Positions 17,580 to 62,954 of a stretch of DNA of 64,000 bases are shown here, one piece after another. Source of the stretch: Diplonema japonicum. Its lineage: Eukaryota; Protista; Euglenozoa: Diplonemea. The notes beneath the pieces are model-generated. The model was not told the origin of the DNA. It searched no databases and was given only the letters and a program-made list of their open reading frames with translations. The position numbers were made by a program, and so were the translations under genes. Where the stretch lies: contig OZ025655.1 of assembly GCA_964019335.1 (NCBI GenBank), positions 620,001 through 684,000 of the forward strand. Reading direction: 5' to 3'. Within the stretch, counting starts at the first letter, position 1. The number at the start of each line of letters is the position of its first letter.

Positions 17580-18661
17580 TTTTTTTTCTTCTTTTTTTGA
17601 GTAGCTGTTAGTTACAGAACACCATATTGAGTCATGAAGGTAACGCGAATTAAACTAATGGCTCATTTGTCGATAGTAAAAGTAGTCTTTTGTTCGTCAT
17701 TGTGTCACTGCCCCTTCATACATATCAAAGACCTGGGATTTTTTTTTTCTTTTTTTTTTTTTTTTTGGTTCTGGGGCCCGGTTCACTATGTCCACACCAT
17801 GGAATCACGAGATTTCATTCTGGTTTTAAGCAGCCTAAAAACTACGTATTTTTTTTTTTCCCCTTCTTTCTTTTCCTCTTCACATTTTACACAAATGTGC
17901 AAAATAATGAGGCCTTTAGTGAATGAAAAAAAGACGACAAAAATAAACAAAAGAAAACAATGGAAAAAAAAAAAGTAAAAATAAAAAGAAAATACACGAA
18001 ACATAACGAAAGCGCCTTTTTGTTTTTTTTCCCCCCCACATACATAATTACTTTCATTTTCTCCCCCCCCCCCCCTTCCCTTCCCTCACGAAGTAGATCC
18101 AGGTCTGAAGTCACTGTATTTCATATGCAAAGAAAAGAAAAATACAATAAGAAAAAAAATTTTTTTTTGGGCAAGCTTTCATAGATAGCTTCCACACGCT
18201 TTTCTTTTGCTCCCTATTTTTTTATTTATTTTTTGTCACCATTAGAGGCATTTGCAATGAAAGTCATGGAAGGGAGGAAGGGGGGAAAAAAAAAAGAAAA
18301 AAGACATCCAAGAAAGTAATTGGGGAGGAAACCAGATCAAAAAAAAAAAAGAAAAGTACGTAAAGGGGAGGGGCGTCACATAACGCGGAAACTGGAGCAA
18401 AAAAAAAATGACAAAAAAGAATTTTTTAAAAAAGAAAAAGAAAAAAACCCCTCCCCCAAGTAAAGGACCATGTCACTTGACGGGGAAAAAAAAAAGACAA
18501 AAAAAAAAAAAGACGACAGGGAAAGGAAAGGGAAGAAAGACACAGATTGGTTTTTTTTTTTTTTTTTTTCTTTTTTTTTCCTGGGAGATTTTATTTTTTT
18601 CTCACCCCCCCCTGATAATTACAATGAACATTTTTTTTTTTTCAATCTATTATTTATTTTT

Positions 18662-18971
18662 TTATGCACCTAACACAAACGCCAAGAAAGCCTTGCAGGC
18701 CTCCCAAAAGATGAACATGAGGCACAAAACAACCCCATCTGTATGTGTATGATTCCCCCCCCCCCCCCCCCCCCCTTTACATACTCAATAACATCTCCTC
18801 CCAGGGTTCCAGCATGTAAATCGCAGTAGTGATCTTGTACTTCTCGTAGCTGCCCACCAACTTCCTAATCGGGTTCCGACTTGAAGATTTTGGGACTTCT
18901 GGGAGATCCAAGTTTCCCTTGTTCCATGAGGGAACACCGTAACGCAAGCCCATCTCTGAAGCAGACCCCAT
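18662..18971 (-). CDS. SPTSS: Serine palmitoyltransferase small subunit (ssSPT, 87 aa; intron 18739-18784)
   Basis: After removing a 46-nt GTATGT..ACAG intron the sequence reads YKITTAIYMLEPWEEMLL|NGVVLCLMFIFW, matching the ssSPT YMLEPWE..FN plus TM motif. Confidence 0.8.
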
Positions 18972-19642
18972 GTTATTATTTTTTTTATTTATTTCTGATT
19001 AACTCCTCCCAACCTACAAGATTTTCTTGTTTTCGACAAAGGAAAAAAAAAAAAAAAAAATTCTTTATGACTATATGTCTTTCGTTTTAAAAAGCTGCGA
19101 AAGTTTTTTGCTCGGCACAAGTTGCATATAGTTATAAAATCATTTTTTGAAAGGTAACAAAAAAAAAAAAAAAATCAACGCAAACATAACACAAGAAGAT
19201 CTATTTAAAATGGGAAACAGGTGGGGAGGGAGAAAAAAAAAAGAGACAATTAGGCGCAAGTGGCTGTCTTTTTTTCTTTTAATAGGGAAACTTGACATGA
19301 AGCTGGTGCCTGTAACATGCCCGGGCGAGTCGAAGTTTGGGGATCACTTAAAAAAAGAGTTGTGGCGATTTTTGTTGTTTGTGCAAAGCTGCCTCGCACC
19401 CTTTTTAGCAAATAACAATTCATTTACAATTATTGTTTTTTTTTTTCTCTTTTTTTTTCTTTTTTTTTTTTCTTGTTTACGCAAACTTCAAAAAAAAAAG
19501 GGAAAAAAAGATAACGAGGATACTAAAATACCTTTACATAATAAAAAATAAAAATAAAACTGTCAACAATAGAATGGGGGAAGCTGAATCTCTTTTTCTA
19601 AAATCTGTGGGATTTTTCCCCTCTACCACTATAACAAACTTT

Positions 19643-19677
<35 letters not shown>

Positions 19678-19786
19678 ACTTTTGACAATAAATGGGAGTG
19701 GGAATGGGGAATACACATTTTCTTCATTCATCTTCCTCCTTTTTTTTTTTTTTTTCCTTCCTAATCGTTGCCTTCCATTCCCATCG

Positions 19787-25700: not shown

Positions 25701-28700
25701 TTGTCATCGACACCAGTGACGAGCACGGTCGCAGGCACGTTCCAGTTCGCAGATGTGAACACAGTAGCCGTGGTGGGTGTTGTTGCTTCAGTGGTGTCGT
25801 TTGTCACAAAAGAGATGCTCACATCGTTGGTGGGCTCGCTGAGCAACCACACGGTGAAGGAGCCGACACCGCCTGCTTCAGTGGTGGTCACTGTAGTTGT
25901 AGACACAGCAACACCAGCCGTGTCATCATCAAGGTTGGTCCCCTCAACGTCTGCGATTGCTATTCTGTTGTAGTTCATGTCAGTGCTCGACGCTGCGTGC
26001 TGGATGAGGTACACAACAGAACCATCATCGATAGCGTCGTCCACTCCCGTGATCGTCACTAGGACGGGTGTTGCCCAGTTCGCCGTTGTGAAGGTGATGC
26101 TCGCGGGACTTACAGTGGCCTCCGTAGTGTCATTGCTGCTCAAGGCAATGGTAACATCAGCTGTAGGTTCTGACTGCAAGCGGACGGAGTACGTGGCGCG
26201 GCTGCCGAGTTCTCTCGTGGTCAGCCCTGCTGCCACAGTAATCAGCACCCCAGCTGTATCATCATCAGTGTTGGTGACCGACACATCAGATGGGTTGATC
26301 ACATTGTATTTCGCGTCGGTGCTTGTGATGCTGTTCGTGATAATGTTGAAGACCTGGTCGCCATCAGCCACGTTATCGTCAACGCCTGTCACAGTGACCG
26401 TAGTGGGAGAACTCCAGTGGTTGGCACCAGGTGTTGACGCACCTGGAGTGAATGTCAAAAGGGTTGCCGAGATGCTGCCCTCAGTCAAATCGCTACTGCT
26501 AAGTGAGATTAAGACATCAGCAACTGGTTGCGTGTGGAGAGCCACTGTAAAGGTTGCTGTACCCCCTGCCTCAGTCACTACAAGACCAGAGGTAGGGAGC
26601 ACTGTCACTCCAGCAGTGTCGTCGTCCACATTGGTAAGGCTCACCTGCGACACAGTGTTGAGTCCGTTGTAGTTAGGATCAGTAGACACAGCAGCACCGA
26701 TGATGATGTTGTACGCAACGTCGTCGTCGTCGATAGCGTCCTGCACACCTGTCACAGTCACAGTCACCACGTTCCCCCATGTTGATGGGGTGAAAGTAAT
26801 CAGCGTGGTGGGGGTAGTCCCCTCACTGGTGTCATCAGATGTGAGCGTGATCTGCACATTGCTAATGGGCTCTGTCGCCAACGAGATTGTGAAAGTTGCT
26901 GTTCCACCCACCTCCGACGTTGTCAAGCCTCCTGTGGGTGTCACGTTGATGCCTGCCACATCATCATCAGTATTAGTGCCCGTCACTGTCGCTGGCGACA
27001 CCAGGGCATACCTCGCGTCGGTCGTGCTACCGATGGTGGCGATGATGGTGTACGCGATGTTACCGTCGTCTATAGAGTCGTTTTCTCCCGTTACAGTCAC
27101 TTGTCGAGGCGTGTTCCAGTTGGCCGATGTAAATGTAAGTTGCCCTACCGACACAGTAACCTCCGTGAGGTCGCCCGACTGCAGGTCGACAATCACATTG
27201 GCAACAGGTTCACTGTTCAGAGTGACTGAGAAGACATCACTTCCGCCAGTTTCTGTGGTGGATAGTCCCATAGTTGGCGTAAGAGAAATGCCTGCGACAT
27301 CGTCGTCAGTGTTGATGACAGTCACGTCAGAGGGGTTGATCCCCAAGTATGACGCATCTCCTGTGGCGGGCTGTGTGACGACAGTGAAAGGTATGTCGCC
27401 GTCTTGGACAGAGTCGTCGACACCACGAACTGCAACGTTGCGTGCGGTGTTCCAGTTCATCGACGTGAACACGAGGGAGGTGGGTGTGATGGAACCCTCG
27501 GTGGCGTCGCTCACAGTCATTCCTATAGTCACATCATTGACTGGCTCAGAGTTCAGCATCACAGAGAACGTGGCTGAACCCCCTGCCTCCGTCGTCACCA
27601 AAGCAGAAGTCGGAGTCACTGTGACGCCAGCAGTGTCGTCATCAGTGTTCGTCAGTGTCACTGTCGTGGGGCTAACCCCATTGTAGCCCATGTCCATTGA
27701 GGTGGTCGTTGTCGACACTGTGTACACCACGTTGCCATCCTGAACAGCGTCCTGTACGCCTGTAATTGTCACTTGCTGCGCGGTTGACCATGTGGTGGAC
27801 GTGAATATCACAGAAGCAGGCGACACAGTCCCTTCTGCGATGTTGTTGGATACCACCGCGATGGTTACATCTGCTGTGGGCTGTGTGTTCAACACAACCG
27901 AAAACGCTGTTGTTCCTCCTTGCTCTGTGGTGGTCAGCCCCGTTGTTGGGGTAACAGACACCCCTGGCGTGTCGTCGTCAGTGTTTGTGACTGTCACGTC
28001 GGGCACGATGACCGCTGCATAAGCCGCATCAGTGGTAACAGGGTTTGAGTTTGTGACTGTGAACGTAATGTCGCCATCACCAAGGAGGTCGTCGACACCA
28101 GTGACAGTGACTGTCTGGGGGTTGCTCCAGTGGTTAGCACCTGCACCGTTGACACCCGCACTGAATGTGATGGACGCAGGAGAAACGGTACCCTCAGTCA
28201 CATCACCGGACACGATGTTGATAACAACATCGGCCACAGGTTGCGTGTTGAGGACAAGGGTATAGGTGGCGGTACCTCCCGCTTCGGTGGTGGTAAGGGT
28301 GGTTGGAGTCACAGTGACACCCGCAACGTCATCGTCGACGTTAGTGACAGGCACGTCGCTGGGCTTGTACCCGTTGTAGGTAGGGTCTGTCGTGACCGCT
28401 GCATCGAACTGCACATTGTACGCCACGTCTCCATCATCGACGGCATCCTGCACACCGGTCACAATGATGTCCTGCGGCACGTTCCAATTCATGGTCGTGA
28501 ACGTTATGGTGTTGACATTGGTGACGCCTTCCCCAGGGTCCGTGGACCGCACATTGAAAGCAACGTTCGCCGTCGGCATGGTGTTCAGCACGATGCTGAA
28601 GGTAGAGCTTGCCCCGACCTCCGATGTGACAACACCACCGGCAGGCAGTCCATATGTCGACTGCGACACAACAGGCACCGCATACAAAACAAGACACAGC

Positions 28701-28732
28701 AGTACCCTGAGCAGGGTTGCCTTTATTTTCAT
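19787..28732 (-). CDS. Giant type-I membrane adhesin/receptor (2981 aa): signal peptide, 23 ~112-aa Calx-beta/cadherin-like repeats, Cys-rich stalk, TM helix, cytosolic WW-like module
   Basis: Hydrophobic N-terminal leader; repeat consensus T.EAGG.ATFTV.L.TQP.ADV.I...S.D.TEG.V.P..LTFT..NW..PQTVTVTGVDD..DDGD..Y...NTDDD; TM WAIALIIAGALLCCGLLLLLGMCLW followed by RKNK; intronless. Confidence 0.85.
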   Translation of the reverse strand: MKIKATLLRVLLCLVLYAVPVVSQSTYGLPAGGVVTSEVGASSTFSIVLNTMPTANVAFNVRSTDPGEGVTNVNTITFTTMNWNVPQDIIVTGVQDAVDDGDVAYNVQFDAAVTTDPTYNGYKPSDVPVTNVDDDVAGVTVTPTTLTTTEAGGTATYTLVLNTQPVADVVINIVSGDVTEGTVSPASITFSAGVNGAGANHWSNPQTVTVTGVDDLLGDGDITFTVTNSNPVTTDAAYAAVIVPDVTVTNTDDDTPGVSVTPTTGLTTTEQGGTTAFSVVLNTQPTADVTIAVVSNNIAEGTVSPASVIFTSTTWSTAQQVTITGVQDAVQDGNVVYTVSTTTTSMDMGYNGVSPTTVTLTNTDDDTAGVTVTPTSALVTTEAGGSATFSVMLNSEPVNDVTIGMTVSDATEGSITPTSLVFTSMNWNTARNVAVRGVDDSVQDGDIPFTVVTQPATGDASYLGINPSDVTVINTDDDVAGISLTPTMGLSTTETGGSDVFSVTLNSEPVANVIVDLQSGDLTEVTVSVGQLTFTSANWNTPRQVTVTGENDSIDDGNIAYTIIATIGSTTDARYALVSPATVTGTNTDDDVAGINVTPTGGLTTSEVGGTATFTISLATEPISNVQITLTSDDTSEGTTPTTLITFTPSTWGNVVTVTVTGVQDAIDDDDVAYNIIIGAAVSTDPNYNGLNTVSQVSLTNVDDDTAGVTVLPTSGLVVTEAGGTATFTVALHTQPVADVLISLSSSDLTEGSISATLLTFTPGASTPGANHWSSPTTVTVTGVDDNVADGDQVFNIITNSITSTDAKYNVINPSDVSVTNTDDDTAGVLITVAAGLTTRELGSRATYSVRLQSEPTADVTIALSSNDTTEATVSPASITFTTANWATPVLVTITGVDDAIDDGSVVYLIQHAASSTDMNYNRIAIADVEGTNLDDDTAGVAVSTTTVTTTEAGGVGSFTVWLLSEPTNDVSISFVTNDTTEATTPTTATVFTSANWNVPATVLVTGVDDNHDDGDIPFLVSFSPLVSTDLKYSGLAPLNTVPGVNTDNDQAGLTIVSGSLITTEAGSSVSFTVELNTIPLADVSVGVTSGDHTEGTVSPSALVFTAANWNRPQQVIITGEDDFIDDGDVSYFVFIGPPTSSDAAYAALAPHILTCQNQDDDSSAVLVTPLFLTTTETGTSDTFTVALGSQPTANVIVTLSNGNPQEGTLSTPSITFTPGSWDTVRTVTVTGVQDPVDDGDVRYLIMTTVTSTDATYNLANAADVEVTNTDDDVVGINVDMAALTTSEAGQSASFTVVLLTQPTADVTLPISSNDLTEGVTTPSLTFASGGAGQWSIPQTVIVTGVDDAVADGDIAYGVTFGSIVSTDAKYAALTPTGPNIVNTDNDVAGLTVAPANGVWNTVVDESGTRTFFTLVLNTEPVADVTVTFALNDTSEGTIAPPTLTFTAMTWTTPQTLTVTGLDDAVSDGDITFAATSLASGADPVYAGLTAPEVLIVNRDNDRVGIAISNNNLTTTEGGGTATFTVQLDSQPTADVVLPLTLTNAAEGTISITTITLTPLTWNQPLSNIVTVTGVDDAVMDGTVTYPINVGPATSTDLQYNGMTSPGVVVHNADNDVAGVLIGTPTGDTSEAGATSTFTVQLQSEPVADVSIPMLSGDHTEGSILPTRLLFTPTNWSSPQTVTVTGVDDSINDGDVQYSIITEIAQSTDPVYQGMDPANPRLVNTDNDAAGVTVADVSGVPITTLTTREDGTTAVFTVKLNSEPLQDVRIDIIGRDQSEGLVGTTLLTFTSGNWDALASVTVTGVQDAVDDGDVQYAISMLVNTMDPTGYTGMLIPDILVTNVDDDAVGVTVNPTTGLRTTEGGGQNTFTVVLHTQPTGDVTIALTTSDTSEGVVSPAQLVFLPGGCATVCTPGRAHWSSPQTVTVTGVDDVSHDGDQAYNIVVSAAVSTDAGYNGLKPSDVAVVNADDDTAVILVEPANPFFNQNTREAMGMNLEFLVKLSSRPTDDVEVNVTSNDTTEGLVSPNMMTFTSLTWNTSQVATITGVDDSVVDGDVVYLITCDSSSTDPSYSSATSQPIQVLNIDDDTADVIVRADPNLFTTEQGGTTQFEVLLSSQPVSDVVISLESSNLQEGIITPLVIRFDMNTWSQPVTVSVSGVNDQVADGNVTYEVRFASIVSNDANYANKMVSSVPIFNVDDDTAAVLVTPLSGLVTNEAGNVTATFTVTLQTQPTVDVVIPIVSGDQTEGTVSPTETRFTSANWNIAQVVTVTGVNDDVDDGDVVYNVLTNRPVTADSAYSLLPGNRVEVTNTDDDDSRAVVCVLPGACSCCSATTSEAGTNAVFTVVLSTQPTSDVTIALSSTDTSEGVVSVSSLVFTTGSWNAVRTVTVTGVQDAVDDGDVTYNVVLSPAVSSDPNFSGLDLPDMVMTNTDDDTRGVTVAPVTMILNETGASNSFTVVLHTQPTADVSIMVQSTDTTEATIDSSTLVFTPNIAGGSNMGRTHWSTPQTVIVTPVNDDVDDGDITFSVAVQAAVSSDPVYNGLKPDDVAVTTLDDDKAGVRVTPTGSLFTSELGGSAIFTVSLDSSPTAPVVIQAVSNNTNEGVANPSSIEFTASDWNTPKTITVTGVQDNVADTDTAYSVGLVVQQGGDALYNALTQVSSVQIINRLGAPTPTTPNTCSYNTVAPAGATGCPTTGQAPTGTTCTYTVNGAACSSVVCQAGGSWSGSPVCGGCSSFVNTCSVLSAPPACGNVCTAAVCCTSCTTFTCPAGRAQTSSVCAAQGCNEATCCAAAAVGSSSDDDIPNWAIALIIAGALLCCGLLLLLGMCLWRKNKTTEKKEETNRHEETNAERGPPPPRERRGEFSDAIYAPRKPPPQMMYDTPPERTEKVVSVLDEGGERFIARWSNTRGRYYYYPEGAGNDIDAIWELPPSGYVVTWKGGPGEGQEYVEDNRVHRSAAPKQDPYSVTPLPTSGANPLQNLQYG

Positions 28733-29823: not shown

Positions 29824-30164
29824 GTTTTGTTTTTTCATGATACCTCGAGCTCTCGGAAGTATTCCGGACCGCCGGCACCCGTCTGGCATGCTGCGAGGAA
29901 ACTGAATAGTGACGGGGCGTCCGATCCGCTCATGCCGTGCATGACCTCTAGCACGCTTGTGATCCTCTTCATTTGTCTCTCCGCTTCTTCTAGTTTTTCA
30001 ATCGGTACCTCGTGATCCCCGTTGCCCAAGTCGATCGCTTTCTCTGTTCTAACCCGCATCGTGGCGTGCTCCACTAAATTGCTCGAACTGTAACCAAAGT
30101 GTTCCGGGCTCACCCCGTCGCACGCTCTGAGCAGCTGCCTGTACACCCTTGCTAGCTGCGGCAT
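28829..30164 (-). CDS. Class-3 lipase-fold protein with N-terminal LYR-like segment (426 aa; intron 29789-29843)
   Basis: Two ORFs are joined by a 55-nt A-rich GTATCA..ACAG intron (ELE|DGF). It carries the GHSSGG nucleophile elbow, VITFGQP and D.F..P...FVHYG; the N-terminus reads ARVYRQLLR. Confidence 0.75.
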
Positions 30165-31670
30165 TGGGTGTGCTGACCTTTTTTTTTTTTTTTTTGTTGT
30201 TGTTGTTGCCGGTATTCAATTTCAAAAATTTCGGTTTATTTGAAAAAAAAAAAAGGAAAGTGTAAAGGGGGGAAAGTCATCATCGATGAGGAAGAAGTAC
30301 TTCGCAACTACCCATCAAAAAAAGGACAATTAAAGAGTGGGAAAAAAAATAGGGGAGGGGAGGAAAGGAGAGAGGGAGGAGAAGATCGCAGAAAACAGTT
30401 AATTCAGTGGGTCGAAGTTAGCACTGTATGTAGTTCAACGTTTATGCCACTAATCACTGTTACTCTTCGTTGTCATGTTCTCAGGGGGAATGGGGTGGGG
30501 TGGTGGGGTATTTTTTTTGTTGTTGTTGTTGTTGTTGTTGAAGCTATAAAAATTTAAAACAAAAAGAAAAAGCAAAAGAAAGGAGAGGTGTTTTGCCACA
30601 CATTTTTTTTTTCTTTTTAAATTGCCTTGTCTCTTCTTTCTTTTCTTTTCCTTTTTCTTTTTTTGGTTCTGCTTGAAGGCGGTTCGCCTTCCTTTCGTTT
30701 TTTTTTTTTTATTTTTTTTCTTTTTACTTTTCTTCCCCTTTTCAAAAACTTTTATGGAACAGGATCTAAAATAAAAAAAGGGGGAACGAGAAAGAGCTAG
30801 AAAGGTGTGGATCTTTTTTTTTTTTTTTTTTAATTTCTGTTTTCCCAGTGGAATATGGAACAAGAAGGGATAGGTGCGCACATCCAAAATCGAAATTGAC
30901 AATGCAACTGAAAAAAAGAAATTGCAAGAGAACGATGGTGGATTGTGGTTCTATACCCCTGGAGTGTAAAGAATAGGAAGAAGAAAAAAAAAAGAATGAC
31001 ATATTCTGGGGCTTTTTTCTTGTTGCGCACAAGCGGATCTTTAAAAAAAAAAAAAAAAATGAAAACAAAAACTTGTTCAAAATCAACCAACAGCATTGCC
31101 ATACGAATAGTCTACAGTACTGACAAATATTACATTGTTAATACCTTTAAAAAAGAAGAAAAAAAGAAAAACAAGGGAGAAGGGTGGGGGGAAATAAGAA
31201 TTCCCCTCACCCTTATAATGCCTCCAAGATACTATAAGGGAAGTGGTGGGAACGGGGAGGAAGAGCTTGCAAACTGAGAAGGAAGGGAAGAGAAAGTGAA
31301 TGAGCGGAGCAAGGTGGAAAGCTTTAGAAAAGGCAAAAACATCATTTATTAAGACACTAAATTATATGAGCTTTGCTTTCGTGCAGCTTCTCCTGCCCCA
31401 TTGCTGTGCCCCTATCATCCCAATCTTTTCCTTCTTTATTCCGTCTCCTTCCCAGTTTACTTTTTCTCTCCCTTTCTTTTTTTTTTTTTTTTAAATTCTT
31501 TATACACAAAAAAAAAAAACAAAAAAAAAAAATCGGTACGGTCCAATAGGGGTATGCAGTGTAACTTTTTAAGATAAAACGAAACGATAGGTGCTAGTTT
31601 TTGTTTTTATTCTTTTTATATTTTACTATCGTGTTAGGGCCAGGTATTAACACTTCTTTCTCCCCCATTC

Positions 31671-32600
31671 TCAGCAAAACGAGGGACTGGTGCAGCACCT
31701 ATCGTGTTTCAAACACTGCTCGGAGGCTCTGGTTTTGGTAAGGTGCTTCTTGTGGGAAGCGTTGCGGGCAGTGGTTTCGGAGAGAGTACGGCGCTTAGTG
31801 GGTTTCACAGTCTTCTTCTTGAGGCTCTGCTTTTTGCCCCTGTAGTGCATCTTGTTGACAGGTGGGTCAGGGTACCCAGGAGAGCAGGAAGCATCACTGC
31901 ACACATCCGAATCAACAAGAGAGAGGGAACTTTCGTCAAACGACACTGTCAGCCCACAAGACGACTGGCTGTCCATTGTGAAGGTGTCCTCGTCCATGGT
32001 GCACGGGCATTGAGGAACAGGAACAGGAGCAGGAGCAGGAGTAGCAGCAACAGCTACTGTAGGTGTCGGTGGGTCCTCGCCCACAACGTCCAGACCTGCA
32101 GCGTGAACGTCTTGTCCGAAGAGAACCCATTTTTTTTCCATTTTCTCAAAGCGCCTCCCCATCTGAGCGATCTTCTTCTTCTTCCTCAGCATTTCCTTCT
32201 CCTCATTCTTCGCGACTTTCTTCACCTTCGTGCCCTTCTTCCTTGCCTTGTATTTGTACGCGCTTGCACGGTCCTCATAGCACAGCACGTCGTGGCACTC
32301 CGTTGCCTGCACTTTGGAACAGGCAGCCTTCTGTGACGTGGTGTGTTCCTTCTTCATCAGAGCTATCCAAGCACATTCCTCTTCGTCCCTTAGGACTTCC
32401 CCCTCCATGTTCACTTGTCTCATGAACGTCAACACCGCCACGGAATCCCATAGTTTCGGCCTGAATGCTTGATCTCCAAATGGCGGTTCCCCTGCAAGGT
32501 CCTTTTGCGCGAGTGTGACGAGCACGCTCTCATATTGGCAGGTCGCAGCCACGAGCATCTTGCGGAGTGCGTCGAGCTCCTGGTTGAGGTGCACGTCCAT
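31671..32600 (-). CDS. Hypothetical protein (309 aa)
   Basis: Long ORF on the array strand; start reassigned to MDVHLN after a pyrimidine tract and AG. Confidence 0.6.
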   Translation of the reverse strand: MDVHLNQELDALRKMLVAATCQYESVLVTLAQKDLAGEPPFGDQAFRPKLWDSVAVLTFMRQVNMEGEVLRDEEECAWIALMKKEHTTSQKAACSKVQATECHDVLCYEDRASAYKYKARKKGTKVKKVAKNEEKEMLRKKKKIAQMGRRFEKMEKKWVLFGQDVHAAGLDVVGEDPPTPTVAVAATPAPAPVPVPQCPCTMDEDTFTMDSQSSCGLTVSFDESSLSLVDSDVCSDASCSPGYPDPPVNKMHYRGKKQSLKKKTVKPTKRRTLSETTARNASHKKHLTKTRASEQCLKHDRCCTSPSFC

Positions 32601-55035: not shown

Positions 55036-55818
55036 TCAACGAGCGCCTAGGGCACCGCGACCGCCATCAATACGGACCGACTCGCCTGTGATGAAGGCAG
55101 CTTGGTCAGACGCGAGGAAGGCGATTAAGTAAGCAACCTCCAAGGGTGTGGCGACACGACCCTCCGCCTTTGCAAGGGGATGGGTCACATCCACTGAACG
55201 TTTAAGGAAGGCAGCGTACTGAACATCGTCCAGCCCACCGCGTTTCTGGAGCTCCGTGACGACGACGCCAGGGTTCACTGCGTTGACGCGGATGCCATGT
55301 TCTGCAAGGTCAAGAGCAGCACATTTGGTGAGCATCTCTGTGGCTGCCTTTGAAGTGCAGTACGAGGCAGTTCCTCCAAAGGACTGCACACCGTTCACAC
55401 TGGAGACGTTCACGATGGACGGCTTCCTCCCCTGTGTGTACCCTGCCTTCATGTAGGGGACACTGTGTTGCATCATCTCGAATACACCTTTTGTGTTTGT
55501 GTTGAAGTTTTCCATCAGGTTCTTAACGTCGCAGGCGTCTGTTCCGAAGGCGGCGCCCTTTAGAACACCAGCGCAGTTTACTAGTACATCCAAGCCGCCT
55601 AGTTCTTCCCCTGCTTCTTTGACTACTCTCTCGCAGACTCCTTCGACGGCCACGTCGCCTTGGTAGATGTTGCACCCCAACGCTTTCAATTCATCCAGTT
55701 TCTTGACGTTTCGCCCCACAGCAGCGACGCTTGCTCCTTCCTTTAAGAAATGCCCGACAGTTGCCTCGCCTATCCCGCTTGTCGCACCTGTAATCAGTGC
55801 TAGCTTCCCGCGGAGCAT
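55036..55818 (-). CDS. Classical short-chain dehydrogenase/reductase (SDR)
   Basis: TGATSGIG, VNCAG, NVSS, catalytic YCTSK, IRVNAVNPG and ITGESVRIDGG motifs. Confidence 0.9.
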   Translation of the reverse strand: MLRGKLALITGATSGIGEATVGHFLKEGASVAAVGRNVKKLDELKALGCNIYQGDVAVEGVCERVVKEAGEELGGLDVLVNCAGVLKGAAFGTDACDVKNLMENFNTNTKGVFEMMQHSVPYMKAGYTQGRKPSIVNVSSVNGVQSFGGTASYCTSKAATEMLTKCAALDLAEHGIRVNAVNPGVVVTELQKRGGLDDVQYAAFLKRSVDVTHPLAKAEGRVATPLEVAYLIAFLASDQAAFITGESVRIDGGRGALGAR

Positions 55819-55953: not shown

Positions 55954-57002
55954 CCCGATCCTCTTTTCTCCTCTTAGTGCTTTTAAAAGGGGAATTGAGA
56001 CTATAACATGTATGGTTCAGACGTCTTTAGAAAAGAAAATGAAGAAGAAAAAAAAAATTGTAGGGAAAAACATGGGATATGATGGGTAGGATTAGGCGGC
56101 AGTTTTTTTTTCCCCCCTCTAAAATTACTCCACGAGAGTTCGGCGGGGTGGGGGGGGTTTTTTTTTTTCTTCCTCTCCCCCTTTTTTTTCCCTCCAACCC
56201 TCTCTAGAATCATGCGGCTTCGGATCCAATACCCCCTCTTTTTTTTCACTTACAAGCAGAACAAAGCATAAAGGAAATTTTGGTGTATTTTTGCAAAACG
56301 TTCAAAATCAGAGCAACAATGACTCTGGGACGGCTTCGCATAGGCTTTCGGCTGATGCTTGAGGCGACATGTGTGTGGCAGAAAAAGAGGAAAGAAGCTC
56401 GAAACCCTTTTGTTTAGACAACGTCAAGAAATGAAGGAGAGAGAGAACAAAAACATTCGAACGACTTTTTTTTGTTTCCCTTTCCCCCCTCCTTCTTTTT
56501 TTTCTTTGATTTGAAATCACGCATTTACAAAAAAAAAAAGATAAAAAAGAAGAAGGGAATCAGATAATTTGTATGCATAAACCCTTCAACACGTTAGATG
56601 CCTTTATTATTTTTCCCCCTTGGTTTTTTTTTTTTTTTTTTTTTTTTTCCAAAAACCAAAAAAAAAAGCCCACTTTTTGGAGAAAGTGTCAGCAACCCGC
56701 AGCGGCGTGACTACTACTCCTTTCTGGAAAAAGGAAAGAAAAAAAAAAAGAAAAAAAAAACAAGAAGGATAACAAAAACAACAAAAAAAAAAAAAAAAAA
56801 AAAAAAAAAGACGTTAAGGTTTGGAATAATATAAATATTATCAAAGGGGGCTCGAGAAAACAAAAAAAAAAAAAAAGGAGAGAGAAAAAAAAAAAAACAA
56901 TGAAGTTCTTCTTTTCCTCAAAAAAAAAAAAAAAATTGGGAAAGGCGAGAGATAGAGAGAGCCAAGAAGAAACCTTTACTAAAAAAAAAAAAAAAAAAAT
57001 CA

Positions 57003-58574
57003 TCACGGACAGGACTCGCCAGCACACTTGAACCACATACGCAGCTTGTTGTGAAGAGCTTGGATGGTGCCAGGGTTGGCTTTCAAGGTACTGTTGTAGA
57101 TGTTGTCCATCTGCCAAGGATCGTTGCTCACATTGTAGTACTCATAGAAATCGATGTTGTCGAAAACTGTTTCGCCTGTTGCCGTAGTTTGGAACTCCGA
57201 GTAGAGCGTGTCTCCAAACTCCCCGTTCAGGTGCCTGATTCCAATGTAGTTGTTCGATGCATCTTCGATATTGTAACAGTTCGGAATGCACTTCGTGTTG
57301 TTGTCATTATAGTAATACTCAATAAACATGGAGTCCCTCCACCCCGCAGTGTACTCGGGCACGTCAAACCCATCAAGGTGTTTTTTCGTAGCAGGCATCA
57401 ATTTATCCTTTTCATGCAAAATAAAGGGTAAAATCGATTTCCCGTCCATATTCGCCGGTTTTGGCAACCCTGCCAACCCTAACCAAGTAGGTGCCAGATC
57501 CACCTGACTTCCAAGTGTTTCAAAGGTACTACCCGCTGTAATACCAGGACCTCTCACCAGAAGGTGGATTCTAATGTCGAATTCATATACATGACGTTTG
57601 TCGAAAGGGAGGTTGAACTCCCCCAGCTGGAAGCCATGGTCGGACGAGTAGAAGAAGTACGTTTTGTCCATGATACCCAGGTCTTCACACAGTGCCATGG
57701 TGTCTTTGATGACGTCATCGACAGACATCAAGGTACGCCATCTGTCTTGGAACACTTGTGTGATCTTTGCGGAGGCGCCTTCTGTGATCATGGGTTCTGT
57801 CCTGATGGTGTAGTGGTGGTCAGCACGCGACTCAAACGAACAATTCCATGACACAGGGCGGGGTTCATGAGGCGGCCATGCAGGGTCCCAATGGTCTGCG
57901 TACCACGGTGCGGGTGTGAACGGCTCATGACACGCCTTTGGTGCAATGTACGCGAAGAACGGTTTCGGTCCGTTCGCAACACGTTTAATCCACGCGTTCG
58001 ACACATTGCCCACGACGGACGTCGTGTAGTTGTCGGGGCCGCCGTGCCACATTCCGTCTGCGAACCCTTCAACACCCTCCACCGCGAACGATGGGGAAAA
58101 GTAATCCCCACCACCATTCGCGAAGTAAGCATCGAACCCTTCCGGAGCCTTATCCGGACATGAGTTCAAATACTTCCCGAAGATGCCCACCGTGTACCCC
58201 GCACCCTCTTTTAGAACCTTCGCCATCGTTGCATTGTTCACAAGATCTTCATCAACATGCATGCAGCAGGAAGGTGCGGCGTGCCCATTGGGGCAAAGAC
58301 CCTCCTTCTTGATGTTGTGGAAGTATCTCCCTGATACAAGCTCAGACCTGCTAGGGCAGCAGATGGGCGTGTGGATGAACCAGTTTGTTGCCATCGCACC
58401 CTTTTCAACAAGCTCCTTCTGTGCCACAGGCATGGGGCCCACACCGTTGTGCATGGGGAACGACCCACCTAGCTTCTGGTCTTGGTCATCCGTGAGGAAG
58501 AAGACTATGTTTGGTTTTTCGGGCTGAGCAGCGCAGAGCAGCGCGCCTGCAAGGATTAAGGCCCCTGCTTTCAT
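57003..58574 (-). CDS. Secreted/lysosomal formylglycine-dependent sulfatase, N-acetylglucosamine-6-sulfatase-like
   Basis: Signal peptide; PNIVFFLTDDQD; CCPSRSELVSG (CxPxR); GKYLN; SSDHGFQLGE; YEFDIRIHLLVRGPGI; DPWQMDN. Confidence 0.9.
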   Translation of the reverse strand: MKAGALILAGALLCAAQPEKPNIVFFLTDDQDQKLGGSFPMHNGVGPMPVAQKELVEKGAMATNWFIHTPICCPSRSELVSGRYFHNIKKEGLCPNGHAAPSCCMHVDEDLVNNATMAKVLKEGAGYTVGIFGKYLNSCPDKAPEGFDAYFANGGGDYFSPSFAVEGVEGFADGMWHGGPDNYTTSVVGNVSNAWIKRVANGPKPFFAYIAPKACHEPFTPAPWYADHWDPAWPPHEPRPVSWNCSFESRADHHYTIRTEPMITEGASAKITQVFQDRWRTLMSVDDVIKDTMALCEDLGIMDKTYFFYSSDHGFQLGEFNLPFDKRHVYEFDIRIHLLVRGPGITAGSTFETLGSQVDLAPTWLGLAGLPKPANMDGKSILPFILHEKDKLMPATKKHLDGFDVPEYTAGWRDSMFIEYYYNDNNTKCIPNCYNIEDASNNYIGIRHLNGEFGDTLYSEFQTTATGETVFDNIDFYEYYNVSNDPWQMDNIYNSTLKANPGTIQALHNKLRMWFKCAGESCP

Positions 58575-59689: not shown

Positions 59690-60829
59690 TTTTTTTTTTT
59701 CCCCCTCCCCGTGGAATCCTTTGGAAGAAAAGTTTGGTGGTGGAAAACGAGGGGAAAAAAAATGGGGGAGAAAGGTATGAGGGAGGGGGGGAAAGGGAGG
59801 AATGAAAGACACCCTCGTGCGGTCTTTTATTTTGTTTTATTTTTTTTTCTTTTTAATTCTTTTTTTTTTCTCTTACGTGTATCGTTATGTTTTTTTTTTT
59901 TTAAAGAGTTTTTTTTTTTTCTTTTTTTTCTTTCATAGTTGGTTTTTAAAAGAGAACAGCAAGGTGGTCTTTATCCAAGGAGATAAAGAAAAAAAAATAA
60001 GAAAAAGGGAAGGCGAGAGGGAGGGAACAAGAATGGAAAAAAAAAATAAAAAAATAAAGAAAAATTTGGATTTTTCAAAAAATAAAAAAAATAAAACAGG
60101 GGATTTGCGAATAGCAAGGTAAATTCGAACTTTCCCTTCTTCTCAAAAGAAGTATTGTGTAAAAAGTTGTTGGTTTTTTTTTTTTTTTCCCCCTTCTTTT
60201 CCCTTTTTTTTTTTTTTTTTTTTTCCGCTCTTCTTTTTTCTTTTTGAAAAAGGGGTTCCAAGCCGCGGCATGTATCAAACACGCCCCTTAAAGGGGAGCA
60301 CTCACCTCCAGTACTGCGATTGCCTTGAGCAACCCATTGCGCTGGAGGCAATTCCAATAAACTAGACCAACAGGTGGTCCGTCATAAATATTACGAAAAA
60401 AAAGGGGGGGGTAACGTTGTGAGTGCAGCGTGCAATCTACAACGATGGGGGGAAACAGCCCCCCATCAAAAGAAAAGTTTTTTTTTATAACACAGTAATA
60501 AAGATAAACCATCTTGAATAACAGCTTCTTTCTTTCTTTTTTCCTCTCTCTCTCTCAACTCTGTTGGTGGCTAAGACGTTGCTATTTTAGTATTCTCTCT
60601 TCCTCTTTTTTTTTTTAAAAAAAAAATTTTTTTTTATAAACACTTCAACCTTCAACTCGCTGGGGTGAATGCCCGTTGCAAGAAAGGGAAGCAGGGTCGA
60701 TAAACAATAAAAAGAAAAGGTAAACCAGGAATTCGGTATTTCCTTTTTCTTTCTTTCTTTTTTCGTCTTTTCTTCTCGTTTTCTTTTTCCTTTTCTTCCA
60801 AAAAAGCCATTTGCAATCATATTCCAAGA

Positions 60830-62779
60830 TCAGACTACCCTCTTGAGGAGGTCAACTGGCTGGCCTGTGGAGGACTCTGCGACCTCCGAGTAGTCTCTGT
60901 ACTTCGGGAGGATGCGCTGGGGGAGCTTCATGGCGTCCCTGCGGAAGGGGTCACCGAGCTCCCTGGTGGTGTGGACGTCGATGACGGTGGTGACGCCGTC
61001 CTTCATCTGGGAGTCGACAGCGGAGCGGAGGGCGTCGCCCACCTGGTCCAGGGAGGAGACGGTGATCCCGCGGCACCCCATCGCCTCCGCGATCCCTGCG
61101 AACCCTGTCTCCGGGTTCACGAGGTTCGTCCCGACGTAGCGGTCCCCGAACCACAGCACCTGGTTCTTCTTCTCCGCGCCCCACTGCTGGTTGTTGAAGG
61201 TGACCACGGTGGTGGGGATCCCCTCCCTCGCGCACGTCAGCAGCTCCATCAAGGACATCCCGAAGGCTCCGTCCCCGACGTAGGCGACAGCCGGCCTCTC
61301 CGGACACCCCACCTTCGCCCCTATCGCCGCCGGGAAGGCGTACCCGCAGTTCCCGAAGGTCAGCGCCGCAAGGTAGCTGCGCGGCTGCTCGAACCGCAGG
61401 TACCCGTTCGACACCGAGCACGTGTTCCCGATGTCCGTCGCCACGATCGCGTCCCGAGGCATCGCCTTCTCCAGCTCCCACAGCACCTTCCTCGGAACGA
61501 GCCTCCCGCCGCTGGTCTCGCAAGCCTCCACGTTCGCCTCCGCCATCGCCTCCAGCTCCGTCGTCCAAGCCGCCCGGTGCTCCTCCATCCTGGCCAGTCG
61601 GCTCTTCGTGTTCTGCTGGAAGGGCGGGGCCGCCGTCCCCGCCTGCAGCCTCTTCAATAGCGCCGTGCAGAAGAGCCCCGCGTCCCCGCACACCCCGACA
61701 TCCACCTCCTTCACCCTCCCCACCTTCTTCGCGTCCACGTCCACCTGCACAACCTTCGCCCCCTCCGGCCAGTAGTCCATCCCGTACTGCGGGTTCGTCC
61801 CGAAGGGTCCCAGCCGCGTCCCGATCGCCAGCACCACGTCCGCCTCCTTCACGCAGTTCATCGCCGTCTTGTGCCCGCAGTAGCCGAGCGGCCCGCACCA
61901 CAGGGGGCTCCTCTTGTCGAACGCGTCGTTGTGCAGGTACGTCGTCGCCACCGGCACCTGCAGGTAGTCCGCCAGCTCCCGAGCCGCCGCGAACCCCGTC
62001 TCCGACATCACCACCCCTCCCCCGACCACCATCACAGGGTTCGAAGCTCCTTCCACCAGGCGTGCCGCTTCCTCGATTCCCCTTTCTCCTCCTGCTGAGA
62101 GTTCAGGGATGTTGATCTTTGGGATCTTAACCTGTGTTTGTTTGTTTGTTTCTTTCTTTCTTTCTTTCCTTCCTTCTTATTTTCTCTCCCACACACAAAC
62201 CTTGTTCTCACCATAAAAGTAATCTCTGGGGATGTTGAGCTGGATTGGACCTCCCTCCCTCACAGCGCTGTCGAAGGCGTAGCCAGTGAGCTCAGCCATC
62301 CTCGCAGGGTGCACCACGTGTACCTGCTCCTTCGTGATGGTCTCGAAGATAGGGAGCTGTTCCACCTCCTGGAAGCCCCCCAACCCTTTCGTGCTGGTTG
62401 CGGCCTCGGGGGTGATCGCCACCACGGGGCTCCCGGTGTAGTACGCCGCTGCAACCCCTGTCACGAAGTTCGTGATCCCGGGACCGTTCTGCGCGATGCA
62501 CACCCCGTGCTTCCCCGTCACGCGGGCGTACCCGTCCGCCATGTGCGCCGCCCCTTGCTCGTGCTGCACAGACAGGAATCGGATCCCCGCAGCGGGGAAC
62601 AGGTCCAAGGCGTCCATGAAGGCCGACCCCACGATCCCGAACACTGTGTCTACCCCTCGCGACGCGAGCGTCTCCACGAACGCCTCAGAGTTCGACATCA
62701 ACGTCGCCTCAGACGACCCAGCCCACCGGCGGCCCCTCAAGGTCTGAGCTGCACTCGCGGTTCTGGCGTAGCGTTGCAT
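60830..62779 (-). CDS. xsc: Sulfoacetaldehyde acetyltransferase (ThDP-dependent, desulfonating) with N-terminal mitochondrial-type presequence (626 aa; intron 62132-62200)
   Basis: Xsc-specific motifs SEAFVETL...FGIVGSAFMDALD, GLGGFQEVEQLP, GPIQLNIPRDYFYGE, TDIGNTCSVSNGYLRFE, FGNCGYAFP, GDGAFGMS...NNQQWGAEKKNQV and ELGDPFRRDA. A 69-nt GT..ACAG intron joins GENK|VKIPK in frame. Leader is MQRYARTASAAQTLRGRRWAGS. Confidence 0.9.
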
Positions 62780-62954
62780 TGTTTTTTTGTTTTTGTTTTC
62801 TGCTCCCCTTTTTTTTCTCCCTTTTTGTGTGTGGAAACCTGAAGGGGGTAAAATAAAAGATAATACAGGGGTTAAAAAATCGAAAAACAAATAGGTGACC
62901 ACCTTAAAGAAAAGCATAATAATGTATACAAGCACAAGCCGGAAGGTTAATGCA

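What the first reader, a model, noticed from the sequence alone, without database searches (positions are those of the whole stretch)
60830..62779. Bacterial-type sulfonate C-S cleavage enzyme (Xsc) domesticated as an intron-containing, apparently mitochondrion-targeted protist gene
Seen: the full-length Xsc motif set, a spliceosomal intron, membership in the host co-oriented array, and a ~22-aa Arg-rich, acid-free N-terminal extension (MQRYARTASAAQTLRGRRWAGS). Established: Xsc converts sulfoacetaldehyde + Pi to acetyl phosphate + sulfite. It is the convergence step of bacterial taurine/isethionate/sulfoacetate catabolism and is normally coupled to Pta or acetate kinase and to sulfite oxidation/export. 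Inference: this protist may run an organellar organosulfonate catabolic pathway producing acetyl phosphate, acquired by HGT. Eukaryotic xsc homologues may already be known in some marine algae, so novelty for this lineage needs checking.
Basis: partly seen in the sequence, partly recalled or inferred. Interest (0 to 1): 0.85.

Follow-up and report, generated by a model that had tools for sequence, protein, structure and literature searches.

The report
Diplonemid nuclear sulfoacetaldehyde acetyltransferase (Xsc) gene
This is a real, spliced and expressed nuclear gene of the marine protist Diplonema japonicum for Xsc, the enzyme that cuts sulfite off sulfoacetaldehyde, but it is an old gene shared by all sampled diplonemids and many other eukaryotes, not a recent bacterial import.

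Summary
Window 60830-62779 (minus strand) encodes a 626-aa protein in two exons (62779-62201 and 62131-60830), split by a 69-nt GT..AG intron. A Diplonema japonicum transcriptome protein (P0001) matches both exons and the exact junction. It scores 802.7 bits on the Xsc equivalog TIGR03457 (cut-off 676.4) against 369.7 on acetolactate synthase (cut-off 538).

The 27-residue N-terminal extension has 5 Arg and 1 acidic residue, and AlphaFold models it with low confidence. A contig from a ~98% identical relative lacks the intron and begins with the spliced-leader 3' end.

New findings:
- A near-identical second copy lies 19.6 kb away.
- Six named diplonemid species form one clade.
- All 95 eukaryote-like Xsc sequences form one group. 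It includes a dinoflagellate, two amoebozoans, a stramenopile, Ancoracysta and a jellyfish.
- That group is marked by presequence-like N-termini and a C-terminal motif (ES.T.QP.D) seen in 91/95 eukaryote-like and 0/83 bacterial sequences.
- The genome also encodes an expressed Pta and an animal-type sulfite oxidase. It has no acetate kinase and no clear taurine aminotransferase.

The recent lineage-specific HGT reading is therefore not supported. Mitochondrial Xsc-Pta-sulfite oxidase catabolism is plausible but untested. The D. papillatum orthologue is already named Xsc at NCBI, so this is a new member of a known kind.

The parts
62839..62840 (-). AG acceptor for spliced-leader trans-splicing; the mature 5' UTR would start at 62838
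   Evidence: The X3 contig has 8 loose letters at 62839 that read ACTTTATT on the gene strand. This is the 3' end of the SL exon ...CTGTACTTTATTG|GT. The SL 15-mer occurs 204 times in G000 and 0 times for the control. The sequence at 62841-62839 reads CAG on the minus strand.
62780..62838 (-). 5' UTR (about 59 nt)
   Evidence: Covered by X3 contig record 10, up to 62839.
62699..62779 (-). N-terminal extension of 27 aa (MQRYARTASAAQTLRGRRWAGSSEATL); putative mitochondrial presequence
   Evidence: Translation. It lies upstream of the Met that aligns with bacterial starts. It has 5 Arg and 1 Glu. AlphaFold pLDDT is 38-45 over residues 1-20. Three synonymous and no non-synonymous changes fall here in the X3 relative.
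62201..62779 (-). Exon 1 coding part, 193 codons (presequence plus ThDP N-terminal PYR domain)
   Evidence: PF02776 at 123.7 bits. Identity to P0001 is 193/193.
62132..62200 (-). Spliceosomal intron, 69 nt, GT..AG, phase 0, A-rich tract before CAG, GC 0.35
   Evidence: The in-frame TAA is seen. It is removed in P0001 and in X3 contig record 10. The A-rich tract before CAG is typical of D. japonicum introns (PMC12621601).
60830..62131 (-). Exon 2 coding part, 433 codons plus stop (ThDP central and C-terminal PP domains)
   Evidence: PF00205 at 111 bits and PF02775 at 132.3 bits. Identity to P0001 is 432/433.
61190..61276 (-). ThDP-Mg binding motif GDG-X24-NN (residues 479-507)
   Evidence: Translation. 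G479, G481 and N507 are invariant in 63 sequences.
61322..61322 (-). The only nucleotide that differs from copy B within CDS plus intron (Ile463 here, Met463 in copy B and in the transcript protein)
60833..60886 (-). C-terminal tail of 18 aa (EVAESSTGQPVDLLKRVV) carrying the eukaryote-specific motif ES.T.QP.D
   Evidence: Translation. The motif is in 91/95 eukaryote-like and 0/83 bacterial sequences. Bacterial proteins end 1-5 residues after query position 607.
60652..60829 (-). 3' UTR (at least this far) and end of the block duplicated in copy B
   Evidence: X3 and X1 contig pieces reach 60652. The duplicated block spans 60652-62841. Both end points abut masked low-complexity DNA, so they are approximate.

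Best explanation
The locus is one of two nearly identical nuclear copies of the Diplonema japonicum gene for sulfoacetaldehyde acetyltransferase (Xsc, EC 2.3.3.15).

Shown:
- It is transcribed. Transcript evidence exists for the gene pair and for a close relative.
- Its single 69-nt GT-AG intron is removed.
- The mRNA 5' end is consistent with spliced-leader addition.
- The protein carries the full ThDP-enzyme architecture and scores as an Xsc equivalog.
- The coding sequence, including the N-terminal extension, is under purifying selection.

Inferred:
- The 27-residue Arg-rich N-terminus imports the protein into the mitochondrial matrix.
- There Xsc converts sulfoacetaldehyde plus phosphate to acetyl phosphate plus sulfite.
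- The genome's single expressed short-form Pta turns acetyl phosphate into acetyl-CoA for the TCA cycle. No acetate kinase is present.
- A cytochrome-b5-type sulfite oxidase detoxifies sulfite to sulfate.

The source of sulfoacetaldehyde is unresolved. Taurine is known in a sister species, and isethionate is another candidate.

Evolution: the gene was already present in the common ancestor of the sampled diplonemids. It belongs to a single eukaryote-wide Xsc group whose nearest sampled relatives are proteobacterial Xsc.
For: Identity:
- TIGR03457 scores 802.7 bits (cut-off 676.4) and PRK07525 831.9 bits, against 369.7 on AHAS (cut-off 538).
- The exon-wise scans and the read-through agree.
- All three ThDP domains are present, as are the GDG..NN motif and E74.
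- The AlphaFold model is confident: pLDDT 91.3, pTM 0.92.

Splicing and expression:
- P0001, from the EukProt D. japonicum Trinity transcriptome, matches exon 1 at 193/193 and exon 2 at 432/433 with junction K193|V194.
- X3 contig record 10 skips 62127-62197 with 2 bridging letters, a net loss of 69 nt.
- That contig carries ACTTTATT at the AG acceptor, matching the SL gene found 204 times in the genome.

Selection: 25 synonymous against 3 non-synonymous differences to the X3 relative.

Host integration:
- The gene sits on chromosome C8 (860,770 bp), and SL genes occur on that chromosome too.
- A second copy lies at C8:700466-702265.
- DNA contig X10 spans 60801-62763 with the intron in place.
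- The intron has the species-typical A-rich tract before CAG.

Phylogeny:
- The diplonemid clade has support 98*.
- All 55 sampled eukaryote-like rows fall on one side of a branch (SH-aLRT 83).
- Bacteria form one clan at 100* in the FastTree.

Targeting:
- 75 of 93 eukaryote-like homologues carry N-terminal extensions of 15 aa or more.
- 69 of those 75 have a net charge of +2 or higher.
- The D. japonicum AHAS, expected to be mitochondrial, starts in a similar way (MKRYLSRGRG...).

Partners:
- Pta passes the equivalog cut-offs (TIGR00651 320.9 against 311.2; NF004167 435.4 against 418).
- Pta is 100% identical to a transcriptome protein and is conserved in D. papillatum.
- The sulfite oxidase has Cyt-b5, Mo and dimerisation domains.
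- Acetate kinase gave no hit.
- Taurine and tauropine were measured in D. papillatum (PMC8611851).
Against: - No enzyme assay exists for any eukaryotic Xsc that I could find.
- No Xsc structure is in the PDB, so substrate-binding residues cannot be checked.
- No localisation data were found. The D. papillatum mitochondrial and subcellular proteome supplements, as stored (at least one file cut when stored), do not list it. No targeting predictor was available.
- No taurine:pyruvate aminotransferase or other dedicated sulfoacetaldehyde-forming enzyme was identified among nine class-III aminotransferases.
- The transcript protein carries Met463 and therefore equals copy B. Expression of the window's own copy (Ile463) is not separately shown.
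- X3 is labelled RNA only as a guess and comes from a relative.
- Only 8 SL letters were seen.
- The conserved eukaryote-only C-terminal tail could signal a functional shift.
- Pta has only about 13 extra N-terminal residues, so its co-location is uncertain.
Confidence: 0.72

Rival explanations
1. The eukaryotic clade, this gene included, has shifted function. It would be a ThDP enzyme derived from Xsc that acts on a related substrate, for example sulfinoacetaldehyde from hypotaurine or another 2-substituted acetaldehyde, and not a true sulfoacetaldehyde acetyltransferase.
For: - A conserved C-terminal tail (ES.T.QP.D) is in 91/95 eukaryote-like and 0/83 bacterial sequences.
- In related ThDP enzymes the C-terminus can cap the active site. 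This is general knowledge and was not tested here.
- No dedicated sulfoacetaldehyde-forming enzyme was found.
- No eukaryotic Xsc has been assayed in the literature searched.
Against: - Scores are well above the Xsc equivalog cut-off for five eukaryotes, at 802-865 bits.
- Identity to proteobacterial Xsc from genera with described Xsc pathways (Cupriavidus, Achromobacter) is 54-61%. That these genera have described pathways is from my own knowledge.
- Pta and sulfite oxidase, the expected downstream enzymes, are present.
- The tail is modelled with only moderate to low confidence, pLDDT 51-68.
Confidence: 0.12
2. The protein is Xsc but is not mitochondrial. It would be cytosolic or in another compartment, and the N-terminal extension would not be a presequence.
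For: - No predictor or localisation data were available.
- The D. papillatum orthologue was not found in the stored parts of two proteome supplements.
- Diplonemids relocate many metabolic enzymes to glycosomes (PMC9512073, listed).
- Pta has only a short N-terminal extension.
Against: - The extension has 5 Arg and 1 Glu and is modelled with low confidence.
- An R-R-W|A pattern at residues 17-20 fits an R-3 processing site. This is inference from general knowledge.
- Presequence-like extensions occur in 75/93 eukaryote-like homologues from unrelated lineages.
- There is no C-terminal PTS1; the protein ends KRVV.
- Sulfite oxidase with a b5 domain is classically a mitochondrial intermembrane-space enzyme (general knowledge).
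Confidence: 0.2
3. The gene is a recent, lineage-specific horizontal transfer from a bacterium into D. japonicum. This is how the finding frames it, and the high G+C of the gene hints at it.
For: - The gene is 0.64-0.67 GC against about 0.50-0.58 for the other window genes.
- The family is predominantly bacterial.
Against: - Orthologues at 63-75% identity exist in Rhynchopus, P. papillatum, Lacrimia, Artemidia and Flectonema, and form one clade at 98*.
- The best bacterial identity is only 54-61%.
- The eukaryote-only tail motif is shared.
- The high GC3 equals that of the host's tubulin genes at 0.88. It fits codon bias or GC-biased gene conversion in multi-copy genes.
- The intron and SL acceptor are host-type.
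Confidence: 0.03
4. The stretch is an assembly chimera, or contamination from a bacterium or one of the endosymbionts of D. japonicum.
For: - D. japonicum carries two bacterial endosymbionts (PMC13598402).
- Logan contigs break at the low-complexity flanks.
Against: - A spliceosomal intron with an in-frame stop interrupts the gene.
- There are two copies on an 860,770-bp chromosome-scale scaffold among co-oriented host genes.
- DNA contigs of an independent run cover the gene with its intron and reach the upstream neighbour.
- The transcript form is spliced.
Confidence: 0.01

Closest known systems
Bacterial sulfoacetaldehyde acetyltransferase Xsc (EC 2.3.3.15; NCBIfam TIGR03457 / PRK07525), e.g. 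the proteobacterial enzymes of Cupriavidus, Achromobacter and relatives
   Same: - Three-domain ThDP architecture and the GDG..NN motif.
- Length of the mature core, about 580 aa.
- Equivalog score of 802.7 against a cut-off of 676.4.
- 54-61% identity over the whole core.
- A Pta is available to use the acetyl phosphate.
   Different: - Nuclear eukaryotic gene with an intron and an SL acceptor.
- 27-aa presequence-like N-terminus.
- 18-aa C-terminal tail with a motif absent from 83 bacterial sequences.
- The xsc and pta genes are not adjacent: pta is on another chromosome, C11.
- No tauXY or tpa partner was recognised.
Sulfoacetaldehyde acetyltransferase of Diplonema (Paradiplonema) papillatum, as named in NCBI (P0003), and the unnamed orthologues in other diplonemid transcriptomes
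   Same: - 73% identity over the exon 2 region and 76% over the full alignment.
- Same length class (628 against 626 aa).
- Same kind of Arg-rich N-terminus (MQRISKPQVASRAASVLRSMRC...) and the same C-terminal motif.
- Same clade.
   Different: - A different species.
- D. japonicum has two copies.
Acetohydroxyacid (acetolactate) synthase catalytic subunit, the nearest family with solved structures (e.g. 1jsc, 1n0h)
   Same: Same ThDP fold and domain order. It gives the best PDB matches at about 220 bits. In eukaryotes it is also a nuclear-encoded, mitochondrion-targeted enzyme.
   Different: - Below the AHAS cut-off (369.7 against 538).
- D. japonicum has a separate AHAS gene on C86, which serves as a distant outgroup with branch length 5.9.

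Membership tests
Xsc, sulfoacetaldehyde acetyltransferase (TIGR03457 equivalog) | Whole-protein score above the curated equivalog cut-off and above any other ThDP family | tested here: met
   P0001 scores 802.7 bits against a cut-off of 676.4. The next family, AHAS TIGR00118, scores 369.7 against a cut-off of 538. The window read-through scores 780. The exons scanned apart score 252.5 and 511.6.
Xsc, sulfoacetaldehyde acetyltransferase (TIGR03457 equivalog) | ThDP-enzyme architecture (N-terminal PYR, central, C-terminal PP domains) with the ThDP/Mg2+ motif GDG..NN and the cofactor-activating Glu | tested here: met
   PF02776, PF00205 and PF02775 are all present. The motif is at residues 479-507. 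E74 is present here and in at least 90% of 63 aligned sequences.
Xsc, sulfoacetaldehyde acetyltransferase (TIGR03457 equivalog) | Phylogenetic placement with Xsc and not with AHAS or other ThDP enzymes | tested here: met
   It groups with proteobacterial Xsc. The D. japonicum AHAS is a far outgroup.
Xsc, sulfoacetaldehyde acetyltransferase (TIGR03457 equivalog) | Catalysis: sulfoacetaldehyde + Pi -> acetyl phosphate + sulfite | not testable with these tools
   This needs an enzyme assay. No Xsc structure exists in the PDB against which to check substrate residues.
Bacterial-style Xsc pathway module (xsc with pta or ack, and sulfite disposal) | A phosphotransacetylase or acetate kinase, and a sulfite oxidase or exporter, in the same genome | tested here: met
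   Pta is on C11 and passes TIGR00651 and NF004167. It is expressed (P0289). A sulfite oxidase is on C8. TauE-family genes are present. Acetate kinase is absent.
Bacterial-style Xsc pathway module (xsc with pta or ack, and sulfite disposal) | A recognisable sulfoacetaldehyde-forming enzyme (Tpa/Toa, TauXY, IseJ, SauS, ComDE) | tested here: inconclusive
   Nine class-III aminotransferases were found, and none matches a taurine aminotransferase specifically. The nearest characterised enzymes are GABA-AT (PuuE), ornithine-AT, BioA, ethanolamine-phosphate phospho-lyase and PbfA. TauXY, IseJ, SauS and ComDE were not searched.
Nuclear-encoded mitochondrial matrix protein with cleavable presequence | N-terminal positively charged, acid-poor extension absent from bacterial homologues | tested here: met
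   The 27-aa extension has 5 Arg and 1 Glu. It is modelled with low confidence. Comparable extensions occur in 75/93 eukaryote-like homologues.
Nuclear-encoded mitochondrial matrix protein with cleavable presequence | Demonstrated import, or a positive call by a trained predictor | not testable with these tools
   TargetP and MitoFates are not on hand. The orthologue was not found in the stored parts of two D. papillatum proteome supplements.

The most novel reading that the evidence does not exclude
A mitochondrial Xsc-Pta-sulfite oxidase route for C2-sulfonates (taurine or isethionate) is an ancestral, widely retained trait of a whole eukaryotic Xsc clade. That clade includes diplonemids, dinoflagellates, amoebozoans, stramenopiles, Provora and even cnidarians, and is marked by its own C-terminal motif. 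Abundant heterotrophic marine eukaryotes would then mineralise organosulfonates directly, a role now credited almost wholly to bacteria.
Probability: 0.4. Interest if true: 0.65.

Novelty: new member of a known kind. Interest (0 to 1): 0.42.

Why it matters
Taurine, isethionate and related sulfonates are major currencies of the marine sulfur and carbon cycles. Their breakdown is normally attributed to bacteria, with eukaryotes seen as producers. Diplonemids are among the most abundant and diverse heterotrophic protists in the deep ocean.

This gene is conserved, selected, probably highly expressed and duplicated, and the genome also encodes Pta and sulfite oxidase. That suggests diplonemids can take acetyl-CoA and sulfate straight from C2-sulfonates. 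The same may hold for many other eukaryotes that carry the same clade-specific form.

For this particular locus the result is mostly a clean annotation. The family is known, the sister species' gene is already named, and the recent-HGT angle does not hold. The open and testable questions are the activity, the location and the substrate source of the eukaryotic form.

Tried and rejected
Gene context and intron conservation in the other diplonemid assemblies (P0004, P0006, P0018, P0003) could not be examined.
The exons were searched apart by reference. The database protein P0001, transcript-derived and equal to copy B, stood in for the full length.
- Rooting: the D. japonicum AHAS outgroup is too long (5.9 changes per site). 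Ten more distant Xsc-like representatives (P0142-P0156) scattered as long branches. The root, and so the direction and donor of any ancient transfer, is unresolved.
- Literature: no paper in the searched library treats a eukaryotic or diplonemid Xsc. Xsc appears only as a counted eukaryotic transcript in the Amazon plume study (PMC5012681).
- Proteome supplements of D. papillatum (PMC12699882, PMC12697944) were searched by enzyme names and Pfam names without a hit. At least one stored file is truncated, so this says nothing either way.
- Reads: X2 laid nothing and X1 laid only flank pieces, because of a contig filter. All runs were contigs, so no depth, transcript ends or allele-specific expression could be read.
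- High G+C as a foreign signature: rejected, because GC3 equals that of tubulin.
- Functional clustering with neighbours: the sulfatase (57003-58574) and the SDR (55036-55818) lie nearby. The SDR best matches generic glucose/butanediol dehydrogenase models below cut-off. Genes between the two Xsc copies have no pathway-related domains.
- The duplicated block's ends (60652, 62841) coincide with transcript ends. They also abut masked low-complexity DNA, so retroposition was not inferred, and the intron is present in both copies.
Full report
**What is at the coordinates**

The finding's span, window 60830-62779, is exactly the start-to-stop span of a minus-strand gene.
- The reading frame runs from the ATG at 62779 to 62201.
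- It is then interrupted by 69 nt (62200-62132, GTTTGT...CAG) that contain an in-frame TAA.
- It resumes at 62131 and ends with the stop at 60830-60832.
- That gives 193 + 433 = 626 codons.

Each was searched by reference. For full-length work I used the database protein P0001, which a search returned.

**Is it Xsc?**

Yes.
- Pfam finds the three ThDP-enzyme domains: PF02776 in exon 1, and PF00205 plus PF02775 in exon 2.
- In NCBIfam both exons hit the Xsc models far better than any acetolactate synthase model. TIGR03457 gives 252.5 and 511.6 bits, against 140.6 and 208 for TIGR00118.
- The six-frame read-through of the genome scores 780 bits.
- The full-length P0001 scores 802.7 bits (cut-off 676.4) and 831.9 on PRK07525. 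On AHAS it reaches 369.7, below that model's cut-off of 538.
- The ThDP/Mg motif GDG-X24-NN is intact. The cofactor-activating Glu (E74, in HEQ) is present here and in at least 90% of 63 aligned sequences.
- An AlphaFold model from that alignment is confident (pLDDT 91.3, pTM 0.92). Only residues 1-20 and the last few residues are poorly defined.
- No Xsc structure exists in the PDB. The nearest chains are AHAS at about 220 bits. Substrate-contact residues therefore cannot be checked.

**Organism, expression, splicing**
- The best database hit to exon 2 is P0001, a 626-aa complete ORF from the EukProt Trinity transcriptome of Diplonema japonicum.
- P0001 matches exon 1 at 193/193 and exon 2 at 432/433 residues, with exon 1 ending at K193 and exon 2 starting at V194. 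This is independent transcript-level support for the intron and for expression.
- The window is G000:C8:620001-684000 of a 62.5-Mb assembly. That fits the published D. japonicum YPF1604 genome of 62.3 Mb (PMC13598402).
- An intron is ordinary in this species. There are 10,131 high-confidence introns, 98.3% of them GT-AG, with a median length of 41 nt. They have an unusual A-rich tract before a CAG 3' end (PMC12621601). This intron shows exactly that (…gaaagaaagaaacaaacaaacaaacacag).

Public runs, all held as contigs:
- A DNA-type run (X10) has a 1,989-nt contig that covers 60801-62763 with the intron in place.
- A run guessed to be RNA, from a ~98% identical relative (X3), has a contig whose two pieces abut at 62198 and 62126 with two bridging letters. 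That is a net loss of 69 nt at the intron.
- The same X3 contig carries 8 unaligned letters at 62839 that read ACTTTATT on the gene strand.
- I recalled the diplonemid spliced leader as ending ...CTGTACTTTATTG and tested that. The 15-mer CTGTACTTTATTGGT occurs 204 times in the genome against 0 for the control. One copy shows the expected SL exon followed by GT.
- The genome reads CAG at 62841-62839 on the gene strand. An SL acceptor at 62840-62839 and a 5' UTR of about 59 nt are therefore likely, though this rests on only 8 letters from a relative.
- Against that relative the CDS has 25 synonymous and 3 conservative non-synonymous differences. The presequence region has 3 synonymous and no non-synonymous changes. 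This indicates purifying selection.

**A second copy**
- The Xsc profile finds two loci on C8: this one, and C8:700466-702265, 19.6 kb away and just outside the window.
- Over CDS plus intron the copies differ at one nucleotide, window 61322. This copy has Ile463 and the other Met463. The flanks differ at 69 positions.
- P0001, the X10 contig and the X3 relative all carry the Met463 form.
- Transcript evidence is therefore strictly for copy B or the gene pair. Expression of the window's own copy is not separately shown. Both Ile and Met occur at this column in homologues.
- Genes between the copies show nothing pathway-related.

**Composition**
- The gene stands out at 0.64-0.67 GC with GC3 of 0.81-0.90. 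Twenty-one other window ORFs have GC3 of 0.50-0.74.
- The host's tubulin genes have GC3 of 0.88.
- This is therefore the host's own bias, from high expression, from GC-biased conversion in multi-copy genes, or from both. It is not a foreign signature.
- The intron is 0.35 GC, like the intergenic DNA.

**Relatives and history**

Named orthologues:

| Organism | Identity over exon 2 |
|---|---|
| Rhynchopus euleeides | 75% |
| D. papillatum (named Xsc at NCBI) | 73% |
| Lacrimia lanifica | 70% |
| Artemidia motanka | 66% |
| Flectonema neradi | 63% |
| Polykrikos (dinoflagellate) | 61% |
| Stereomyxa (Amoebozoa) | 60% |
| Ancoracysta (Provora) | 59% |
| Copromyxa (Amoebozoa) | 57% |
| Rhopilema esculentum (jellyfish, on a 4.4-Mb contig) | 57% |
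| Paraphysomonas (stramenopile) | 55% |

- The best 80 bacterial species representatives in GTDB are 54-61% identical and almost all Pseudomonadota.
- A FastTree of 180 rows puts all bacteria in one clan (100*). An IQ-TREE (LG+C20 PMSF, quick search) of 94 rows puts all 55 eukaryote-like rows on one side of a branch (SH-aLRT 83).
- The diplonemids form one clade (98*). That clade sits inside a 98* group with a clade that includes the Polykrikos sequence and with unnamed marine sequences.
- The root is not resolved. AHAS is too distant, and ten more remote Xsc-like representatives scatter as long branches.

Two independent characters back the single eukaryotic group:
- A C-terminal tail with motif ES.T.QP.D is in 91 of 95 eukaryote-like and 0 of 83 bacterial sequences. 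Bacterial proteins stop 1-5 residues after query position 607.
- N-terminal extensions of 15 aa or more are in 75 of 93 eukaryote-like sequences that begin with Met. Net charge is +2 or higher in 69 of those 75.

Most of the 95 are unnamed metatranscriptome proteins. I call them eukaryote-like on these characters and on their clustering with 14 named eukaryotes.

The gene is thus ancient in diplonemids and part of a eukaryote-wide form. A recent transfer into this lineage is excluded. An old bacterial origin is plausible but not demonstrated here. A 2026 preprint reports that most diplonemid HGT candidates are shared with other marine eukaryotes (10.64898/2026.01.29.702485). It does not mention this gene in its main text.

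**Pathway context in the same genome**

| Component | Result |
|---|---|
| Phosphate acetyltransferase (PTA_PTB domain) | One gene on C11, 342 aa; TIGR00651 320.9 against 311.2; NF004167 435.4 against 418 |
| Pta expression and conservation | 100% identical to a transcriptome protein; 53% to the NCBI-named D. papillatum Pta |
| Acetate kinase | No hit |
| Sulfite oxidase | One gene on C8 with Cyt-b5, Mo and dimerisation domains and an N-terminal extension |
| TauE-family genes | Present |
| CDO-like gene | One |
| SLC6 transporters | Present |
| TauD-family genes | Present |
| Class-III aminotransferases | Nine, none matching a taurine aminotransferase specifically |

- TauE, CDO, SLC6 and TauD are generic families and prove nothing on their own.
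- TauXY, IseJ, SauS/T and ComDE were not searched.
- Taurine and tauropine have been measured in D. papillatum (PMC8611851), so a substrate pool is plausible.

**Mechanism proposed**

Shown: a nuclear, spliced, selected Xsc orthologue with a presequence-like N-terminus, plus Pta and sulfite oxidase genes.

Inferred:
- Import into the mitochondrial matrix. Residues R17-R18-W19|A20 fit an R-3 processing pattern (general knowledge, not tested).
- Desulfonation of sulfoacetaldehyde to acetyl phosphate and sulfite.
- Conversion of acetyl phosphate to acetyl-CoA by Pta.
- Oxidation of sulfite to sulfate.

Not known: the enzyme that makes sulfoacetaldehyde, the role of the eukaryote-specific tail, and where Pta resides.

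**Novelty**

The enzyme family is well known. The D. papillatum orthologue already bears the name at NCBI. Eukaryotic Xsc transcripts have been counted in a metatranscriptome (PMC5012681). I found no paper that studies a eukaryotic Xsc, though the searched library is open-access only. I file this as a new member of a known kind. The clade-wide eukaryotic form, with its presequence and tail motif, is the more interesting by-product.

**Tool notes**

Noticed in passing
G000:C8:700466-702265 (locus L082), 19.6 kb beyond this gene and outside the window: A second Xsc copy. It is identical over CDS plus intron except for 1 nt (Met463 instead of Ile463), and its flanks diverge. This suggests recent duplication or gene conversion. 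The transcriptome protein P0001 equals this copy.
   Followed up: yes
Alignments A1/A2; window 60833-60886: A eukaryote-specific C-terminal tail motif, ES.T.QP.D, is in 91/95 eukaryote-like Xsc and 0/83 bacterial Xsc. Its function is unknown, and AlphaFold models it with only moderate to low confidence.
   Followed up: partly
P0080 (Rhopilema esculentum, 4.37-Mb contig) and P0108: A jellyfish genome encodes an Xsc of the same eukaryotic form with a long presequence-like N-terminus. An animal Xsc would be worth its own look.
   Followed up: no
window 57003-58574 (-) and 55036-55818 (-): A sulfatase (PF00884 plus SGSH_C) lies about 2 kb downstream of Xsc in the same co-oriented array, and a short-chain dehydrogenase about 5 kb downstream. 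The SDR matches only generic models below cut-off. A functional link is unproven.
   Followed up: partly
G000:C38:183635-184837 (L097:1294-2724:+): A class-III aminotransferase-fold protein scores above cut-off as PbfA, (R)-1-hydroxy-2-aminoethylphosphonate ammonia-lyase (645.8 bits against 525). This hints at phosphonate catabolism in a diplonemid.
   Followed up: no
G000, 204 places (e.g. L103:1480-1515): Spliced-leader RNA genes (…AACGATTCTAAAGCTACAGTTTCTGTACTTTATTG|GT) are dispersed over many chromosomes, often near chromosome ends, and do not sit in one tandem array.
   Followed up: partly
window 17001-20000, 30001-32000 and 56001-57000: Long AT-rich gaps (GC 0.31-0.41) with poly-purine and poly-pyrimidine runs lie between the co-oriented genes. 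The largest is about 2.7 kb, upstream of the 2,981-aa ORF at 19787-28732.
   Followed up: no
G000:C11:336644-337597 (L084:1468-2493:-): A short-form phosphate acetyltransferase is conserved in diplonemids. Its nearest named relatives are in Chara, Sphaeroforma and green algae. GC3 is only 0.51, unlike Xsc.
   Followed up: partly
G000, 56 tubulin-domain matches: Tubulin genes are highly multiplied and scattered, for example seven on C58. Their GC3 (0.88) matches that of the duplicated Xsc. This raises the question of whether GC-biased gene conversion, and not expression, drives GC3 in multi-copy genes.
   Followed up: no
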